The notes under the pieces were generated by a model. It saw only the letters and a program-made list of their open reading frames with translations. It did no database searches and was not told the origin of the DNA. From positions 257,449,882 through 257,513,881 of the forward strand of contig NC_133618.1 of the NCBI RefSeq assembly GCF_048593235.1: a stretch of DNA of 64,000 bases, written 5' to 3'. Numbering within the stretch: position 1 is the stretch's first letter; each line of letters starts with the position of its first letter. The position numbers and the translations under genes are program-made. The stretch comes from Sminthopsis crassicaudata. Taxonomy: Eukaryota. This document shows positions 2,466 through 58,063 of the stretch, piece by piece.

Positions 2466-3095
<630 letters not shown>

Positions 3096-27701: not shown

Positions 27702-28175
27702 GTCTCCCTCATCCACCTATTCTTTAACATGGCTGGCATTTTGCTGTGGTACCTAGTGCCTGCCCTCCGCCTGCCCATCCCTCTGGCCAAGAAGTTTGGG
27801 AACGTGACTGCCCGTTACCGCTGGGTGGCCGGTGTCTACCTGGTCTTCAGCTTCTTCCTGATACCCCTGGCGGTCTTTGGGCTATCCATGGCGGGAATTG
27901 CTGTGCTGGCCGCTGTGGGAGGGCCCCTGCTTGGGCTCCTAGTCTTGGTCATCCTTATCAATGTGATGCAGCGGCATCGCCCGGCCTGGCTCCCCCGCCG
28001 CCTCCGGTCCTGGGCCTTTCTCCCGATTTGGCTCCACTCGCTTCAGCCCTGGGACCACGTCATCACCAGTTGCTGCAAGTGCTGTCCCCAGGCCCACGAC
28101 CCCCCTGTGGACACCAAAGTCAAGGAAGCCTACTGCTACGAGAACCCTGCTGTCCTGGACTCCCACAGGCTGTGA
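27702..28175 (+). CDS. SLC34A3: SLC34A3 last coding exon
   Basis: [47 protein letters not shown]; acceptor ccctAG ends 27701. Confidence 0.97.
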
Positions 28176-43500: not shown

Positions 43501-44072
43501 TTGGAAGAACAAGCGTTTTTTTGGTTTGTTTTTGTTTTTGAACAGTGGGCTTAAAAAGCAGTCTCAGCTCTAATTGTGTACAGTCTGCTGGAGTCCCCGC
43601 AAGGGACATTAGGGATGCAGGGCCCAAGATCAAGTTCTCCACGCCACGCACCTGCCACCTGAATTGTGACGCTAACGAAGCTTTACGCTTCTTTCAGGGG
43701 GATGGAAAAGCTGAGGAACACTTCCATTTTTTCCCGGGCCTTCGTTCCATGCAGGGTTCCGGCGCTCCTCGGACCCCCAGGAGCTAAACCCCTCTGGCTA
43801 AATCCAGGCGGAGAACACCCGCCGTCGCTCCCGGGCTAGGCCAACCTCCGGCTCAGAGGCAGTCTCCCCCCCGCCTTCGGTTGCCCAGGGCCACGCGACT
43901 CTACACAAACAGTCTCCAAGAGGGGCGCGGCCTCGGCCACCTTCCTCCGAGGAGCCTCAGGGACCCTGAAACAGAGCCCCCGCCCCCACAAGAACCCAGT
44001 ACCCACCCGCTCCACCCTTCAGCGCGCCTCCCGCTGCAGTGCGGCGGTTACTAAGACGCTAGCTACTATCAA

Positions 44073-44354
44073 CCAATAGCGTGAGGCTTTCGTCGGCCTC
44101 GCCTGAGTAGGCCAATGAAAAGATAAATCAATCATTTGAAACAGCCAGTGGAGGATGCACTGCAGCGCGAGGGGAGGCGTCCTGATAGGCAGACGTGAGA
44201 CCATCCTCCACCAATAAAGAAGGGGAATTGCCAGAAAGGCGGGAGTTGAAGCCTTAGATTGACAAGGTTGGAGCCAATAGTATATGAAAACATATGGCCT
44301 CGTTCTAGTTATCCAATAAATGGCGAGAGGAGGCGGGTGCTTATGGCTATATAA
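44073..44354 (+). promoter_or_regulatory. TUBB4B core promoter: five CCAAT boxes and TATATAA
   Basis: CCAAT at 44073, 44112, 44211, 44274 and 44313; TATATAA at 44348-44354, about 90 nt before the ATG. Confidence 0.8.
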
Positions 44355-44443
44355 GAGTTCGGCAAACGTCGGTTGCAGCAGTCTGCGCGCCCGATCTTTT
44401 TCCGCTTCTGTTTGTGTTTCTCTCAGTTGCCGCAGCCGTTACC

Positions 44444-44500
44444 ATGAGGGAGATCGTGCACCTCCAGGCCGGGCAATGCGGCAACCAGATCGGCGCAAAG
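44444..44500 (+). CDS. TUBB4B: TUBB4B exon 1 (MREIVHLQAGQCGNQIGAK)
   Basis: accATG start, donor GTGAGC. Confidence 0.98.
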
Positions 44501-44972
44501 GTGAGCGGCAGTGGTCTAGGTGGGAAGGCTCTCGGAACATTGGAGCCGGCCCTGGGGATCGCTGAGGGCGGCGGCACCGGGAAAGATGGCGCCGGGAGGG
44601 TCTGAGCCACCTCCGCATTGCGGAGAGGGGACTCTGCAGCGCTTCGGGTCCGCTTGAAGAGAATGCGGAGAGGGAAGTGCTGAGTGTGATGGGGGGTGGG
44701 GGTTCGCGATCCCCGAGCTTCCCCGGCTTCTTAAGCTTCCGGGCCCATCCCTGGGTGAGGCCCCGTGGGGAAAGCGGGGCGGGGATGGAGGAGAGGAAGG
44801 AGGGAGCGAGGGAGGGAGGGTAGGGAAGAGCTGGACCGGGACTTGGCCTGGGCCTCTTCTTCGCCCGCGCGGAGCCCGCCCGGGGCGTGGCCGGCTCCGC
44901 CCTCCGCAGCGCCGCACCGGCTTGCACCGCCTAGCCGGCGTCAGTGACTCAGGGTTAGCTCTGCGTGATTGA

Positions 44973-45170
<198 letters not shown>

Positions 45171-45227
45171 TGAGGGCTGGGCCTTTCCGTTTTCCTGGGC
45201 TGCCTGGCTCAGCAGGCCTCTGACTAA

Positions 45228-45365
<138 letters not shown>

Positions 45366-46106
45366 TGATTACATAGGAAAAAAACAATGTTCCTTCCTCT
45401 TTTTAATTGAGCTATCAAAGCCACTTTGGGGAGCTGCTGGGTGGAGTCCCTATCTTTTGATCTTCAGTTCAGGTTATTTGGGGAGAGGAATTGGCACTGG
45501 TTTCCCAGGTACCTGGCAACAAGCAGCATGACTCAATCTCTTCTCATCTCCCCATAACCCCCCCCCCCCTTTACATTTAAAGAAGTCATAGAATACTAAT
45601 ACTAGAAGAGACTGTAACAGAGAATCAGTTTCTCACATGCTGGATGAAAATTTAGGGGTCTTTGAAATGCCAGTATTAGCTTGATAGCTGGATTTGTCGT
45701 TTGTTTCTCTAGCACTTTGACATGGGCACTTCTGGTTGAGGAAGCACAGGGTCTTTGGGTTCTTTACATCAATAGGCATTTTATTGAGATGCTTATTAAA
45801 GTGACTGAAGAAACTGGTTACTGGTACCTTAACTCTTGTGTTGGGGGGGGTGAAGGTGGTCAGACTTAAAGTCTTTTGACCTAATGTGTCATGTCAGTAA
45901 TTTCATCACCAAATTGTGTGTTTTTAGTTTTGTTTTTATTATTTAAAGTGATGGTTAACCATATTGATTTAAAGTGGGTTTTTAAATTTTTTTTCTGAAC
46001 TTTAGTTCTTAAGAATTGAAACCCTGATAATACTTGGGATATATTTCTTGAGAGATAAGAGTTGGGGGGTGTGGGAGGGATGTTGTTAAAGAGTTGTGGA
46101 TGGTAG

Positions 46107-47222
<1,116 letters not shown>

Positions 47223-47273
47223 AGCTGTGCATCAGTTACTCTGTAAATTATGTTGAAAGCTGTATGAACTCTT

Positions 47274-47279
47274 TTTATT
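47274..47279 (-). terminator. CIMIP2A poly(A) signal AATAAA (minus strand), inside the TUBB4B 3'UTR
   Basis: + strand TTTATT; first AATAAA/ATTAAA hexamer 3' of the CIMIP2A stop on the minus strand. Confidence 0.65.
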
Positions 47280-47373
47280 CACTCACAAACTTGTTTTTCT
47301 GATGTTCATGTCTCGCGTTCTGCACTTGCTGTTTTCCTGTTCTTTGACATCAAAATGCTGTACAGATAACACC

Positions 47374-47379
47374 ATTAAA
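47374..47379 (+). terminator. TUBB4B poly(A) signal ATTAAA with downstream GU-rich element
   Basis: About 150 nt after the stop, followed by tgcattgtttcgtctcttctgttc; overlaps the CIMIP2A stop codon. Confidence 0.75.
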
Positions 47380-47475
47380 GCATTTTTCGTAGTGCATTGT
47401 TTCGTCTCTTCTGTTCATTTCGATAAGCTTTGCGAGTACTGCTGCCAAATGTTAAACCATAAGTCTCTCTCAAAG
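47375..47475 (-). CDS. CIMIP2A: CIMIP2A exon 7 (TLRETYGLTFGSSTRKAYRNEQKRRNNALRKML*)
   Basis: Acceptor ctcttttacAG; YGLTFGSSTRKAY matches the FAM166A C-terminus; TAA at 47377-47375. Confidence 0.9.
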
Positions 47476-48413
47476 CTGTAAAAGAGCAGAATATGGACTG
47501 AAGAGATGATTGGTGAAATGTCAGGCTTCTTAGAACAAAATGAGTTTCTGTGGCTTTCTGTTTTAATTGCCTGGGAGTTACCTAATAAAATGGCTGTTTT
47601 CCCTTTAGGGGAGGAACTGAAATGGTCATTAGTGGTGAATAAATAAGCTTTTAGCTAATGGCAACTAGACCTACATTTCTTTGAAGATTTTAAAAGCCTC
47701 TTAAAATTTACACAAGCATTATGGCTTTAAGGTTACCACATGGGCCTTAATTAACTGGCAAAATTTTTGTTTTAGGCTTTCCCATGCTTAAGCCAATGCC
47801 ATAGTTTGCCATCAAGATTATAGTTCTGAATGTTAGCCTACATTTGTTAACCACATGTAAATTTGCAGCCACCTGCAAAGTTTGTATCTGCCTCTTGGCT
47901 GTTACTGACACCAAAAAACTTAGTGGGTATCAAGCTTGAGTTACAAGTAAAGGATCACTTTACAATAAACCTACATCTATGATTATATTGAGTGACAAAG
48001 CTACCTAAGTCATGCTAAGTTTTTAGAAACACTATATTCTAAAGATTAATGTATTAATACCAGTCAGATATTTAGTATACTGATAAGCAAAACTGCTTGG
48101 CCTTGCAGGGGGAAATCTAACCCATACTACAATTTATGAGAATCAGTTTAAATATCACACAGAATCAGTGCAAACACCACAGCTAAGGATATTAAATAGT
48201 TTTTTGTCCTCCAAAGGTGGTGTCTAGGGGGCTATATCTGGTATTCAAATAAAAGAAAATGGTTTTAAAAGGTGCTCGGTAATACTGGGAAGGTGCCTGG
48301 ATCAAAAGCCTTTTTAGAAAATTACCTTTAATTTCCAACTACTAATAGGCACAAGTTCGTGCACTCTTATATAACTTATTTTTCTCAATGCTTGTCATTT
48401 TAGGTATAACTTA

Positions 48414-48554
<141 letters not shown>

Positions 48555-49811
48555 TTACTTGCAAATGCAGAGGCTTTTTTACGCATTAATAACTATTAAA
48601 AAAAGCCAACATAATTAAGCTTAACTTGCCTGCCTTTTGGTAAATTGTGTTTCCTGGCTTTGTGTAAATGATAACTTGACATTAACATTTCTTTTTTACT
48701 CCCAAGGCTTATTGGTGCCAGATTCCTATCAGTCTGAGGAAACAACTAAAAGGCAGCCTATAGAATGCTCTCACCCTTTCTGGCAGTACATTGATGTTTA
48801 TCAGGTTGGAATCTCACCATCCTGCCAAATGGGAGGACAATCAAGAGTGGTGCTTAGGCCCCATTGTTAGTGGGCACCAGGTGCCTGATGGTGTCAGATG
48901 ATGCAAGGCCTCTAAGAATTAAATTTCTGTTCAGGTGCCATCTAGGAAGCACAGTCATCCTCTAGAGTTTAGAAAAGGAGGGTGGGAGTGCTACAAAAGT
49001 AAGGGCTTGTTAGTCCTACGGAATCAGGTGAATGAATTAGCTGGGAAGAGGAAGAAAGGGGTGGGTTATGGGAGTTTGTCTTATGCCTACAGGATTTAAG
49101 ACTTGGGGGAAAGGAGCAACGATGTGAAACATACAGCTTCTACTTCTGATGTTAGCCTGTACAGTCTCTGTTTTGGGTGCCCTACTCCTGTCCTGTCTAC
49201 CTAGTACAGGCCATGTTCTAATTAGCCTTTGACTCTGGCAGGGAATCTGTAAAGTTATTTCTCCTCCCCTCCCCACCCAGGTTTTCCTACAAGTTAATGC
49301 TCTCGTTCCTCAATTCCACATATTACCCCCTTTACTTCTCTGCTACACCTTAACAATTTCCTCCCCACCAGGGTGGAATCTTGTCTGGGTTCTCACATTT
49401 AGAAAGTTTTTCCTCTCTCTGTTGTCTTTAGAGGAACATTTAGAGGCCAAGCAACACTCAGCAACTCCCTGATGGGTGCTTTTGCAGCCTCTGTAGTAAC
49501 CAACATTTCAGAAAATGTTTTAACCTTAGCTAAACCTCTATTGCTCAAACTCATTGGGGAGGAGGAAGGGCACACAGCTTTCCCACCTCAGAGAATGGTG
49601 AGAAAATAAGATCTTTTAAACATATTCCTCAAGTTTAGAGTCTTCCAAGGCAGATTAAATCTGTTACTCTAGCTGCTGTCTCATCCGTGAGCTAGCTTCA
49701 GATTGAGAGCAGGAATATCAAAATGAACAGCAGAGTTTTTAGCACCATTCCCTTTAAAAGTAGCCCCTAACTTTCCCAAAAAGAAATTCGATGTGCTTGC
49801 TAAAACCAGTG

Positions 49812-49812
<1 letters not shown>

Positions 49813-49845
<33 letters not shown>

Positions 49846-49980
49846 AGGCAATTGGGGTTAAGTGATTTGCCCAGGGTTACACAAGCTACTAAGAGTTAAG
49901 CATTAAATGGCTGAGGCCACATTAGAACTTGGGTCTTCCTAACTCCAGAACCAATGTTCTATCCAGTGTGCTACCTAGTT
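49813..49980 (-). mobile_element. WSINE1-type SINE with a 32-nt poly(A) tail (T32 on +), in a CIMIP2A intron
   Basis: T32 followed by GAGGCAATTGGGGTTAAGTGATTTGCCCAGGG. Confidence 0.8.
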
Positions 49981-50282
49981 CTCACCCCTCCTCCCCAGTT
50001 CGTAGTCTCTAAGGAGACTAGCATTCCCACAGTTGTGTCACTGACACAAATGGGGGGAGGGAGATTTTGCTGTGTTCTCAGGGAGGCCAGCAGGGAGCTC
50101 AAGGTCCAGAGGGAAATGTGCTTGCAGTCCCTTGTCACTCTTCAAGGCTGTTTGCTTTTGTCTTGGACAATTTTTCCTGTCCTTTGTTTTGTCATTTCCT
50201 TGTTCTCAGAACCTTAAGTCTCATCTTATCCCATTTAACAGAGTGGCACTACAAGGAGCTCAATGACTCTCAACTAGGTCTA

Positions 50283-50450
<168 letters not shown>

Positions 50451-50689
50451 TTAGCAACTGACTGGAATGTCTTTTAACTTGGTGAGAAGTTTTAAATTTT
50501 TCATATCCTACTAGATGTATTCTACCCTGCGATTCTTGACCCATTAGGACTCCCCCCTCCCCTGTGTGGCAGGACAATGGTATGAAAAGAGTGAAGGACT
50601 CTTTTTTTGGCCCTTCTTCATATCCCAAGGGCTTAGCCCAGTGCCTGGCACATAGAAAGTCCTTAATAATGGCTTGTTGACTGTCTAGG

Positions 50690-50860
50690 AGTCAGGAGAC
50701 TAGGGTTTGAGTCCTGGCTTTGCCATTTGCCAGCTGTATGACCTTGGGCAACTTTAGATTCTCTGAGCCTCAGTTTCCTTAGCTGTAAGACCAGAGTGTT
50801 CCCACTATTCACCTCCCGGGCTCTGTGAGGAGGAAATGTATGTGAAGATGTGTAATGTGG
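50690..50860 (+). mobile_element. MIR SINE
   Basis: GGAGTCAGGAGACTAGGGTTTGAGTCCTGGCTTTGCC..CCTCAGTTTCCTTAGCTGTAA. Confidence 0.7.
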
Positions 50861-51600
50861 GGATGTAGTATGTTTGTTGGTAAGCCTCAGTGCTGTCTGA
50901 CAGAATGCTAGGGACATGTACAGGAGAAAGGGAAGGTTTTGTTCAGATGTTGCTTTCCCTGTTGCACAGTTAGCCCCTTGGCCCTTTGGGTGGGGTCTGA
51001 GCATCTCTCTCAGCATAGCTGTCACAGTCCTGTGTGAAGGAATCTGGCTTCAATGTCATTACTCTCGGGAGCCAGGCAAGCAGGCAGGTGGGCAAGGGTG
51101 ACCCCCACATAACCGCCAGGAGGGGTTTGGCTTCCAGCAGGACCACTTTCATCTTCCTTCTTGAGCCATCTCTCTCCCTTTCATTTACTGGCATAGTTTT
51201 GAACTCTGGAGTTCCATGGAGTATGACAGTGGACTTTGTATCTTGCCTGTCTCTACAGTGTGGGAAAGGAGGTAGCTGGGGCCTATGCTTTGGGTCTGTT
51301 CCAGGTGTTCCTTTGAGGTCCCTCTGATACCCACCTCTGACGGCAGAGGCTCAGAGGGCACGGGAGCAATGAGCTAAGTGGAGGCAAGGCTGAAGCCTGA
51401 AGGAATGAATGCCAAGGGAGAGAAAAAAAAATCTAACTTAGAATCAGACTCTGAAAGGATCAGATAAACAAATACCTCATTTTACAGGTAAGACACTGGA
51501 GGCCCAGAGAGGTGAAGGTACTTGCCCCAAAAGTCTCAATGAGTTTGTGGCAGAACCAGGACTGAAACCCAGTCATGGCTTCTGGGCTCCGGCCACCCAC

Positions 51601-51727
51601 CCGAGATGGCTTTGTGCTGGATCAGGTTGGGCGTGTATAGCTTGGGAAGCTTCTCAAACCTGCCGACCTCTAGTGCATCTGTCTGGGGAGGTGGAAGGGG
51701 CTCCACATCTTTCCGGGGCTGGTACAA
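51601..51727 (-). CDS. CIMIP2A: CIMIP2A exon 4 ([30 protein letters not shown])
   Basis: 127 nt, AG/GT boundaries. Confidence 0.92.
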
Positions 51728-51843
51728 CTAGAACAAGGAGGACAGAGCTCAAGTCACCTCCTGAGCTGGCTGAGTAGCCATGCTGTCCCAGCCCCTCCCC
51801 CACTTTGGTCCAATGAGTGCTGACAGGGGCCAACCCACGGTAC

Positions 51844-52426
<583 letters not shown>

Positions 52427-52910
52427 TCAGCGGAAGGAAGGTGGGTACAGGGATGCTGTCGCGGCCGCCAGGGAGACAAGGAGAGGGAGTTTCCCAAGGG
52501 GACCCAGTCCAAACGTCAAAGCCATGATTCCCTCTGTGGGGGCAGGAAATGAGTCCCAGGTTGGGAGAAGAGAATAGCAGTCAATACAAGGATCTCATTC
52601 ATTCTGAGATGTCAGAAAGAGCTGAAGGTGGACTAGGGAAGGCAGGGCGAAGTTCTGTGTGGGGTGTACCTCACCAGAATCTTTCCCAGGGCTTCTCAGC
52701 CACATTACTGCTCTGTTCCAGAATGCTTATCAGCCGGTCCCCAACCCATCCCCACCCACCCTCATCCCCTCGCCCCAGGTTTCTGAACTTCCTGAAATTC
52801 CCCACCAGGCATCTCCCTGGCCCAGGGCACCCCAGTCTCCAACCTCCAAACTCCTGGGCCCTCTGCCCTTAACCTCAGTACTCAAACAGAGGCCGTGATA
52901 GAGTTCTCAC

Positions 52911-52966
52911 CCAGGAATATAGTGTGGCTCCGGTGTGAAAAGGCTGTGATTCTTAGTTGCTATCAT
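52911..52966 (-). CDS. CIMIP2A: CIMIP2A exon 1 (MIATKNHSLFTPEPHYIPG)
   Basis: 56 nt, acaATG, donor GTGAGA; FTPEPHY matches the FAM166A N-terminus as recalled. Confidence 0.9.
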
Positions 52967-53037
52967 TGTAACCCCAGTAAATCCTGAACTGGGGCCAGCT
53001 TGGCCAGGACATCAAACTCTTCTCCTCAGAGGAAACT

Positions 53038-53051
53038 GTTACCTGGACAAC
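53038..53051. promoter_or_regulatory. Candidate RFX X-box upstream of CIMIP2A
   Basis: GTTACCTGGACAAC (reverse complement GTTGTCCAGGTAAC), an imperfect palindrome 72 bp upstream of the ATG. Confidence 0.45.
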
Positions 53052-53994
53052 CATTGTGAAGAGATGGTACCAAGGCCAGAAATAATTTCTAAAAGCCTGA
53101 TGCTTTCCCTTACCCCAGATACTCAAGACTTGGACTTGGACCTGCCAGGTGTGCTGGTTTAGCCTTTATGCCTGTTTCAAGGCCCTCCTGCCTTAATCTT
53201 AGCCCCCAATTTTCCATAGCCACCTGAAAACTCAAAATTTGATTTTTTTCCCCTTTCCTTCTTGATTTCTCCTTGTACCAGGTTAAGGAATCACAAATCT
53301 CCTAATAGCTTTGGTCAGAGATTAATTAGGTAGCCCCATCCAACATACCCCTATCTTCCTTGCTCATTTACCATATGGTTTCTATCTCAAAGTCAAACCT
53401 CTGACTAGTGGGAAATGTACAGTACCTTGGTAGATGACATCTATCTCTATCCAGCAATAATTTAGGTTTTGTGATCAAGGATCTGCCATAACCAAATTAT
53501 TCATTTCTCTTCCAAGAAGTCTTCCTTTGACTGTTCTGCTCCATTTTTAACTCAACTTTTTCTGGATTTTCTCTCCACCATCGCTTACTATATACAGCAT
53601 AGTATCTTGTATTGTTTTGTGTTTTAAATTGTGGTTTTGGCAAACATTTTGCTATTATCATTGCAAGAGCACTAGATTTCCAGTCATATCCTGAGCACAA
53701 ACTCTTGATACTTATAATGATGACGTTGGGCATATCACTCCAGTAGGCTTCAGTTACTTCATCTGTTAAAACAATGGAATTGGCCCATTAATATTTAAAT
53801 TCCATGACGCTGTATTTAGATTTCAAGCCCCCAGTAGGCAGAAGACTGTGGGGGTTTTTTTTTTTTTGGTTTTTTTTTTTTGCCAAAGAGATATATTTTG
53901 GTGCTTTGCAATCATAGCAAACTAATCTGATTTTGTGTTGTTCCCTTTTCTCCATACCTATCCTTATGTTAAAAGGACAAATGAGTATGTTTTA

Positions 53995-57928: not shown

Positions 57929-58063
57929 NNNNNNNNNNNNNNNNNNNNNNNNNNNNNNNNNNNNNNNNNNNNNNNNNNNNNNNNNNNNNNNNNNNNNNNN
58001 NNNNNNNNNNNNNNNNNNNNNNNNNNNNNNNNNNNNNNNNNNNNNNNNNNNNNNNNNNNNNNN
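57929..58063. other. Assembly gap (135 N) following a GA/AC simple repeat in STPG3 intron 3
   Basis: N run read directly; 57850-57928 is a GAGA/GACA repeat. Confidence 0.99.

What the first reader, a model, noticed from the sequence alone, without database searches (positions are those of the whole stretch)
47255..47475. TUBB4B and the microtubule-inner-protein gene CIMIP2A interlock tail-to-tail: one gene's stop codon lies inside the other's poly(A) signal
Seen: the CIMIP2A last exon (minus, 47475-47375) ends ..EQKRRNNALRKML-TAA, and that TAA (47377-47375) falls within the TUBB4B ATTAAA (47374-47379). The expected TUBB4B cleavage site (about 47394-47404) and its GU-rich downstream element are the reverse complement of the purine-rich E/K/R/N codons of CIMIP2A, so these bases do double duty. 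The first CIMIP2A hexamer (AATAAA, 47279-47274) is in the TUBB4B 3'UTR, predicting about 140-150 nt of mutual mRNA complementarity. Known: TUBB4B is a major axonemal beta-tubulin, and FAM166/CIMIP2 proteins bind the doublet-microtubule lumen through PYG repeats. Inference: a tubulin and its luminal partner could be coupled through convergent-transcription interference, dsRNA formation or competing 3' processing in spermatids and motile-ciliated cells. I recall the 3' overlap also existing in human, so the arrangement is probably ancient, but I know of no functional study.
Basis: partly seen in the sequence, partly recalled or inferred. Interest (0 to 1): 0.75.

Follow-up and report, generated by a model that had tools for sequence, protein, structure and literature searches.

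The report
Ancient tail-to-tail TUBB4B–CIMIP2A gene overlap
A beta-tubulin gene and a sperm-tail microtubule-lining protein gene point at each other and share about 140 bases at their ends, an arrangement kept since before birds and mammals split, but the eye-catching "stop codon inside the other gene's poly(A) signal" is a local marsupial accident and nothing yet shows that the overlap regulates either gene.

Summary

The window comes from a marsupial. Nine eutherian loci and one bird locus show the same convergent pair, with 135-152 nt between the two stop codons, so the arrangement is at least amniote-old.

In all of those loci CIMIP2A ends at a TGA 6-7 nt beyond the hexamer. The bird also has the hexamer's antisense TAA in frame three codons further on. 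The window has CGA where the others have TGA and reads on through four more codons (RKML). "Stop in the hexamer" is therefore a derived single-base stop loss.

- **TUBB4B 3' end:** orthologous poly(A)-tailed contigs place cleavage 13-15 nt past the hexamer. Stranded RNA reads in a close relative stop before 47407.
- **CIMIP2A RNA:** none was seen, so its 3' end and any co-expression remain inferred.
- **Conservation:** it is concentrated on the two poly(A)-signal islands, with no excess synonymous constraint.

The "FAM166A-TUBB cassette" is already in the literature. Regulatory coupling is untested. This is an ordinary conserved cis-antisense pair with a neat evolutionary footnote.

The parts
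44444..47222 (+). TUBB4B coding region, four exons: 44444-44500, 44991-45099, 45244-45354, 46162-47222 (stop TAA 47220-47222)
   Evidence: Peptide and splice-site mapping. Pfam Tubulin and Tubulin_C on exon 4. 100% identity over 299 aa to proteins named tubulin beta-4B.
47223..47396 (+). TUBB4B 3'UTR, about 172 nt, with predicted cleavage at 47392-47396
   Evidence: Stranded RNA depth is 15-27 over 47223-47360, low in 47361-47406 and zero in 47407-47498. Orthologous poly(A)-tailed contigs L009 and L010 end 13 to 15 nt after the hexamer.
47359..47362 (+). UGUA motif upstream of the TUBB4B poly(A) signal, inside the invariant block TGTACAG
   Evidence: Invariant in all 7 aligned species. Its role as an upstream processing element is inferred from general knowledge of poly(A) sites.
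47374..47379 (+). TUBB4B poly(A) signal ATTAAA
   Evidence: Invariant in the marsupial, eutherians and bird.
47397..47425 (+). U/GU-rich stretch downstream of the TUBB4B cleavage site; it is the reverse complement of CIMIP2A codons for ..YRNEQKRRNN
   Evidence: Sequence. Eutherian pairwise identity is 73%, against 55-59% for intron and mid-UTR. Function as a downstream element is inferred.
47375..47475 (-). CIMIP2A last (7th) exon, including the stop TAA at 47377-47375
   Evidence: Match to solved FAM166A chains, residues 292-319. Conserved against gelada and bird fragments.
47387..47389 (-). CGA codon at the position where the eutherians and the bird have the CIMIP2A stop TGA. This is the stop loss that adds RKML.
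   Evidence: Alignments A1 and A2 and the MAFFT alignment. Peptide read-outs.
47244..47374 (-). Predicted CIMIP2A 3'UTR, complementary to most of the TUBB4B 3'UTR; the end is expected 10-30 nt past the AATAAA
   Evidence: Inference from the hexamer position. No minus-strand RNA reads were seen.
47274..47279 (-). CIMIP2A poly(A) signal AATAAA (TTTATT on the + strand), within a conserved block spanning about 47260-47289
   Evidence: Present at +38 to +52 after the TUBB4B stop in the window and in all ten eutherian contigs, but absent in the bird. The block is 89% identical among eutherians.
48419..52966 (-). CIMIP2A exons 1-6: 52966-52911, 52406-52195, 52106-51844, 51727-51601, 50383-50289, 48536-48419
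   Evidence: Exon-fragment blastp against the gelada and bird loci. Splice-site reading and phase bookkeeping. Exon 5 matches solved FAM166A chains. The exons were not joined.

Best explanation
This is an old, conserved convergent gene pair. TUBB4B (+) and CIMIP2A/FAM166A (-) end 135-152 nt apart, stop to stop. Each gene's poly(A) signal lies inside the other's terminal exon, so the mature mRNAs should be complementary over roughly 130-150 nt. The two genes are most likely held together passively. Neither 3' end can be moved or mutated freely without damaging the other's 3' processing or its C-terminus, which explains two sharply conserved islands (one around each hexamer) in an otherwise fast-evolving UTR. 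The 'stop codon inside the poly(A) signal' is a lineage-specific by-product. The ancestral CIMIP2A stop was a TGA 6-7 nt beyond the hexamer, followed in frame by the TAA that any ATTAAA spells on the opposite strand. In the lineage of this marsupial, TGA became CGA, and translation now runs four codons further (RKML) to that backup TAA. Shown here: the sequence features, the conservation pattern, the ancestral stop position, and the approximate TUBB4B 3' end. Inferred: the CIMIP2A 3' end, the existence of overlapping mRNAs in one cell, and the absence of a regulatory role.
For: Features at the stated coordinates. Marsupial origin: the RNF224 ORF matches koala at 90%, bilby at 89% and opossum at 87%. 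The same convergent TUBB4B / CMI2B-like pair is found in gelada, a second papionin and unidentified eutherian contigs, and the bird Willisornis vidua. In all ten, CIMIP2A stops at a TGA 12-13 nt after the start of ATTAAA. The bird reads TGA AAA CTG CTT TAA and the window reads CGA AAA ATG CTT TAA. Solved bovine and mouse proteins also end four residues earlier than the window protein. Poly(A)-tailed contigs are cleaved 13-15 nt after the hexamer. RNA depth falls to zero by 47407. Eutherian pairwise identity by segment: antisense-PAS block 89%, UGUA-PAS-cleavage block 81%, proximal UTR 46%, mid UTR 59%, intron 55%. [quoted passage not shown]
Against: No CIMIP2A-strand RNA was seen, so the overlap of mature mRNAs in this species is not demonstrated. 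The bird lacks the antisense AATAAA, so the mutual dependence is not identical across amniotes. No other marsupial was obtained, so the branch on which TGA became CGA is unknown. Passive entanglement is a default that is not positively proven. Two functionally linked axonemal genes staying adjacent for over 300 million years is also what selection for co-regulation would give.
Confidence: 0.75

Rival explanations
1. The overlap is a regulatory module. In spermatids, convergent transcription, mRNA duplex formation or competition between the two interleaved poly(A) sites couples the output of the main axonemal beta-tubulin to that of its luminal partner, and the arrangement is conserved for that reason.
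For: The pairing and the stop-to-stop spacing of 135-152 nt are conserved from bird to mammals. Both products are parts of the sperm doublet microtubule: TUBB4B is the main beta isotype, and FAM166A/CIMIP2A is the sperm-specific lumen protein. Distal CIMIP2A codons are 73% identical at all three codon positions, above the intron and mid-UTR background of 55-59%.
Against: Conservation is limited to the two hexamer islands, and the middle of the would-be duplex evolves at background rate. Third positions are no more conserved near the overlap than further into the exon, 76.7% against 77.5%. Only the TUBB4B strand was detected in three stranded runs. TUBB4B is broadly and highly expressed whereas CIMIP2A is sperm-restricted. 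No paper in the library links the two genes functionally through antisense effects. One study argues against RNAi in mammalian natural-antisense regulation (PMC1779516, title and abstract only).
Confidence: 0.12
2. There is no real mRNA overlap in this species. CIMIP2A transcripts end elsewhere, or the gene is barely expressed, so the interlock exists only at the DNA level.
For: There were no first-mate-on-plus reads (CIMIP2A-strand RNA) anywhere in 47223-48600 in three RNA runs. The bird has no canonical antisense hexamer in the TUBB4B UTR.
Against: The AATAAA at 47279-47274 is the first and only canonical hexamer within 470 nt downstream of the CIMIP2A stop, and it sits in a block that is 89% conserved among eutherians. 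The tissue of the runs is unknown and only about 6% of each run was read. The gene model is intact, with 7 exons and consistent phases.
Confidence: 0.1
3. The CGA codon is an assembly or sequencing error, and the real stop is the ancestral TGA.
For: It is a single-base difference from all other species. RNA read depth over 47387-47389 was low.
Against: All 28 sampled 31-mers of 47223-47520 are held by runs under four organism labels; the 20 runs holding the stretch come from nine studies. No alternative letter was reported in the reads.
Confidence: 0.03

Closest known systems
The FAM166A-TUBB cassette of primate genomes (Wilming et al. 2015, PMC4584094)
   Same: The same two gene families, adjacent and tail-to-tail. 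[quoted passage not shown]
   Different: That paper treats it as a duplication unit near the DUX4 clusters. It does not discuss the 3' overlap, the poly(A) signals or non-primates. Here the pair is shown in a marsupial and a bird, with base-level anatomy.
Mammalian cis-antisense (convergent, 3'-overlapping) protein-coding gene pairs (e.g. Engstrom et al. 2006, PMC1449890: 5,248 cis-antisense pairs)
   Same: Two protein-coding genes on opposite strands share transcribed 3' sequence, and each poly(A) site lies in the partner's terminal exon.
   Different: This pair has unusually deep conservation (amniotes) and links two components of one structure. The overlap reaches a few codons of one CDS, not only UTR.
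mRNA duplexes between convergent genes in yeasts (PMC6993858)
   Same: It is proposed that overlapping 3' ends of convergent genes can pair and have post-transcriptional effects.
   Different: That was shown in yeast. Nothing comparable was tested here, and only one strand was seen in RNA.
Stop-codon loss with a short C-terminal extension to an in-frame backup (tandem) stop
   Same: TGA became CGA, and translation ends four codons later at a pre-existing in-frame TAA.
   Different: Here the backup stop is supplied by the antisense reading of the neighbouring gene's ATTAAA. It is therefore protected by selection on a different gene.

Membership tests
Convergent cis-natural-antisense protein-coding gene pair | Two genes on opposite strands with 3' ends facing each other | tested here: met
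   TUBB4B is on + and CIMIP2A on -, with the stops 152 nt apart. The same holds in L001, L003 and L011 as annotated.
Convergent cis-natural-antisense protein-coding gene pair | Mature transcripts of both genes extend past each other's 3' end | tested here: inconclusive
   The TUBB4B end is supported: depth reaches zero by 47407, and orthologous poly(A) junctions lie 13-15 nt after the hexamer. The CIMIP2A end is only predicted, from a conserved AATAAA.
Convergent cis-natural-antisense protein-coding gene pair | Both transcripts present in the same cells | not testable with these tools
   Three stranded runs showed only the TUBB4B strand, and their tissue is unknown. The read-laying quota was one call.
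TUBB4B (class IVb beta-tubulin) | Tubulin GTPase and C-terminal domains, and the isotype-defining acidic tail ..[15 protein letters not shown] | tested here: met
   Pfam PF00091 and PF03953. 100% identity over 299 aa to proteins named tubulin beta-4B. Synteny with SLC34A3-type and CMI2B-like neighbours in gelada.
CIMIP2A / FAM166A (microtubule inner protein) | Sequence match to FAM166A chains solved inside sperm doublet microtubules, better than the match to FAM166B/CIMIP2B | tested here: met
   Exon 5 scores E 2.7e-18 against 8i7o_H3 and 3.1e-18 against 8otz_Al, versus 1.8e-6 or weaker for FAM166B. The last exon scores E 3e-4.
CIMIP2A / FAM166A (microtubule inner protein) | Pfam CMI2B-like domain (PF10629) above the gathering score | tested here: inconclusive
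   Single exons only were scanned. The best was 13.1 bits against a cut-off of 21.6. The full spliced protein was not scanned because joining was left out. The annotated orthologues in L001, L003 and L011 carry PF10629.
Canonical vertebrate poly(A) site | AAUAAA/AUUAAA hexamer, cleavage 10-30 nt downstream, U/GU-rich downstream element | tested here: met
   For TUBB4B the hexamer is invariant, cleavage lies 13-15 nt downstream in orthologous tailed contigs, and a T/GT-rich stretch follows at 47397-47425. For CIMIP2A only the hexamer and its conservation were shown.

The most novel reading that the evidence does not exclude
The interleaved 3' ends are a selected device that ties production of the sperm axoneme's main beta-tubulin to that of its lumen-lining partner in spermatids, through competing 3' processing or convergent-transcription interference. 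This would explain why the stop-to-stop spacing of 135-152 nt has survived since the amniote ancestor. The marsupial stop loss would then show how tightly the two reading tasks are packed, with one hexamer now serving as a poly(A) signal on one strand and a stop codon on the other.
Probability: 0.1. Interest if true: 0.6.

Novelty: new member of a known kind. Interest (0 to 1): 0.3.

Why it matters
Taken at face value this is a textbook-style example rather than a discovery. It shows how overlapping 3' ends can lock two genes together for hundreds of millions of years. It also shows how the antisense reading of ATTAAA provides a ready-made backup stop codon that is guarded by selection on the neighbouring gene. 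If the overlap did couple TUBB4B and CIMIP2A output in spermatids, it would bear on how axonemal tubulin and microtubule inner proteins are supplied in proportion, and on TUBB4B-linked ciliopathy and infertility. No evidence for that was found here.

Tried and rejected
- **P0013 (porpoise TUBB4B isoform):** not on record.
- **Fish tubulin loci:** one had no DNA available and the other has a lysyl-oxidase-type neighbour. These are probably not orthologues and say nothing about pre-amniote history.
- **Other marsupials, none retrieved by any route:** the word search with the 44-aa last-exon peptide found no candidates (the 32-aa version was too short). An exact look-up of the 32-aa ORF found nothing. 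A metagenome scan for the marsupial-type junction pattern found nothing.
- **Rfam:** no family in 44000-53500.
- **Earlier scan notes:** none for this place or for these words (one search was a syntax error, as was the paper search).
- **Excess synonymous conservation in the overlapped codons:** rejected. Position-3 identity is 76.7% distal against 77.5% proximal.
- **A-to-I editing:** the only differences seen (48513, 48579, 48581) lie outside the overlap and include a T>C, so they look like polymorphism.

Full report
**What is in the sequence**

- The plus-strand beta-tubulin ORF ends ...[15 protein letters not shown] with TAA at 47220-47222.
- ATTAAA sits at 47374-47379. It is the only AATAAA/ATTAAA on the plus strand between that stop and 47584.
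- The minus-strand exon runs from 47475, behind a good acceptor (ctcttttacag, AG at 47477-47476). It encodes ..LRETYGLTFGSSTRKAYRNEQKRRNNALRKML and stops at TAA, the reverse complement of 47375-47377, inside the hexamer.
- AATAAA on the minus strand lies at 47279-47274, 52 nt beyond the tubulin stop. It is the first canonical hexamer after the minus-strand stop.

**Gene identities**

- Tubulin exon 4 carries Pfam Tubulin and Tubulin_C. It is 100% identical over 299 aa to proteins named tubulin beta-4B in porpoise, gelada and an antbird.
- The four coding exons are 44444-44500, 44991-45099, 45244-45354 and 46162-47222.
- On the minus strand, exon 5 matches FAM166A/CIMIP2A chains solved inside mouse and bovine sperm doublet microtubules (8i7o_H3 at E 2.7e-18, 8otz_Al at E 3.1e-18). 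FAM166B matches much more weakly. The last exon matches residues 292-319 of the same chains.
- Fragment-by-fragment comparison with the gelada and bird loci, plus reading of splice sites, gives a seven-exon model: 52966-52911, 52406-52195, 52106-51844, 51727-51601, 50383-50289, 48536-48419 and 47475-47375. The phases are consistent and the model has 323 codons.

**Whose genome**

An intact RNF224 ORF at 2622-3092 is closest to koala (90%), bilby (89%) and opossum (87%), and about 70% or less to placental mammals. The window is AT-rich for this locus, at 36-52% GC. The window therefore comes from a marsupial whose own protein is not a cluster representative.

**Comparative loci**

- The gelada TUBB4B isoform look-up gave L001. 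It contains a sodium-phosphate cotransporter gene, TUBB4B, and a convergent 316-aa CMI2B-like gene.
- Looking up the exact 299-aa exon-4 ORF gave nine further loci, L002-L010.
- None looked human. Their 3' flanks are 75-84% identical to gelada, except L003, which is 98% identical and comes from another Old World monkey assembly. No human sequence was fetched or compared.
- An antbird isoform gave L011, again with a convergent 310-aa CMI2B-like gene.
- Two fish look-ups were uninformative.

**What the comparison shows**

- Where a locus reaches far enough, ATTAAA lies 124-135 nt after the tubulin stop; it is at 152 nt in the window.
- Every eutherian contig has the antisense AATAAA 38-44 nt after that stop. 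The bird does not.
- In every locus that reaches the last CIMIP2A exon, the protein ends ...T/A-L followed by TGA, read as TCA within TTTTCA(T/C)AG on the plus strand. That TGA starts 12 nt (eutherians) or 13 nt (bird) after the first base of ATTAAA, so it is outside the hexamer.
- The solved bovine and mouse proteins likewise end four residues before the window protein does.
- The window has CGA at that codon (47389-47387) and the same 13-nt spacing as the bird. The bird reads TGA AAA CTG CTT TAA, and the window reads CGA AAA ATG CTT TAA.

The most economical history is as follows. The ancestor had a TGA stop with an in-frame backup TAA supplied by the antisense of ATTAAA. Eutherians lost one base of the T-run, which put that TAA out of frame. 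The lineage of this marsupial changed TGA to CGA and so extended the protein by RKML to the backup stop. Whether other marsupials share it is unknown, because I could not retrieve any.

**Transcript ends**

- **Orthologous contigs.** L009 and L010 are 139/140 identical in the UTR and carry terminal A-runs of 24 and 28. These runs begin 15 and 13 nt after the hexamer, which is 5-7 nt past the antisense stop codon. Whether they are mRNA contigs or processed copies, they mark the TUBB4B cleavage site.
- **RNA reads.** I laid raw stranded reads from three runs of a very close relative (organism B, which holds 93-100% of the sampled words) on 47223-48600.
  - All reads over the UTR had the first mate on the minus strand, the usual signature of plus-strand RNA.
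  - Depth was 15-27 up to 47360, low in 47361-47406, and zero in 47407-47498.
  - Most of these 150-nt reads start in the coding region, so they cannot reach past about 47372. The data bound the end at 47406 or earlier but do not pinpoint it.
  - No read in the opposite orientation was seen anywhere in the stretch. CIMIP2A RNA was not detected, so its 3' end and the 130-150 nt duplex remain predictions. The tissue is unknown, and only about 6% of each run was read.

**Conservation pattern**

| Segment | Pairwise identity among five eutherians |
|---|---|
| Last 60 tubulin coding bases | 95% |
| Proximal UTR | 46% |
| Block around the antisense AATAAA | 89% |
| Mid-UTR | 59% |
| UGUA-ATTAAA-cleavage block | 81% (27 of 50 columns invariant across all seven species) |
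| CIMIP2A codons under the downstream element | 73% |
| Rest of that exon | 90% |
| Intron flank | 55% |

- Third codon positions are no more conserved next to the overlap (76.7%) than further into the exon (77.5%).
- The distal codons show equal identity at all three positions. That fits a weakly constrained protein tail lying over a modestly constrained downstream element.
- Constraint therefore sits on the two processing signals, not on the duplex as a whole.

**Known background**

- The library holds no functional study of the overlap.
- Wilming et al. [quoted passage not shown] This narrows plausible co-expression to spermatids.
- Thousands of mammalian cis-antisense pairs are catalogued (PMC1449890).

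**Verdict**

The anatomy and the antiquity of the pair are supported, and extended to a bird. The "stop inside the poly(A) signal" is a marsupial-lineage stop loss onto a backup stop, not an ancient interlock. The regulatory reading has no support so far.

The best explanation is passive entanglement of two genes whose 3' processing signals lie in each other's terminal exons (confidence about 0.75). Active coupling remains possible (about 0.1), and testis 3'-end data and promoter perturbation would settle it.

Noticed in passing
window 2505-3095 (+): An intact single-ORF RNF224 (157 aa from 2622) that is closest to koala, bilby and opossum RNF224. This identifies the window as marsupial.
   Followed up: yes
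window 47499-47682 and 48373-48600: A few RNA reads in the TUBB4B orientation lie beyond its poly(A) site, antisense to CIMIP2A intron 6 and exon 6. Plus-strand AATAAA hexamers at 47584 and 47638 could serve a rare longer TUBB4B isoform or read-through that would cover the whole CIMIP2A last exon. Depth is only 1-4.
   Followed up: no
window 48513, 48579, 48581: All four X22 reads show A>G, T>C and A>G relative to the window. This is most likely polymorphism between the sequenced relative and the assembly rather than editing, because one change is T>C.
   Followed up: no
window 48419-48409 (-): The in-frame donor of CIMIP2A exon 6 is GTATGT, at 48418-48413. A consensus-like GTAAGT lies 4 nt further on. 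If it were used, it would shift the last exon into a frame that stops early (..FERDLWFNIWQQYSQSLSK).
   Followed up: partly
window 47223-47272: The proximal TUBB4B 3'UTR is 70% identical between this marsupial and the bird (e.g. CTGTAAATT.TGTT.AAAG.TGTATGAACTCT) but only 27-38% identical to eutherians. An old UTR element appears to have been lost or replaced in placentals.
   Followed up: partly
L011:9942-10200 (bird): The bird has no canonical hexamer on the CIMIP2A strand within 260 nt of its stop, only a palindromic TTTAAA at +31. Its CIMIP2A 3' end must be specified differently, possibly reaching the tubulin coding exon.
   Followed up: no
window 27729-28175 (+): A 148-aa hydrophobic ORF that may be the last exon of the sodium-phosphate cotransporter gene (SLC34A3-type), which lies upstream of TUBB4B in gelada. 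If so, the intergenic distance is about 16 kb here, against about 5 kb in gelada. This was not tested.
   Followed up: no
L007:66-1835: A metagenome-assembly contig with two tubulin C-terminal ORFs in inverted orientation and very high coverage. It is probably an assembly artefact or a cDNA-derived palindrome.
   Followed up: no
window 57929-58063: A run of 135 N (gap or masked stretch).
   Followed up: no
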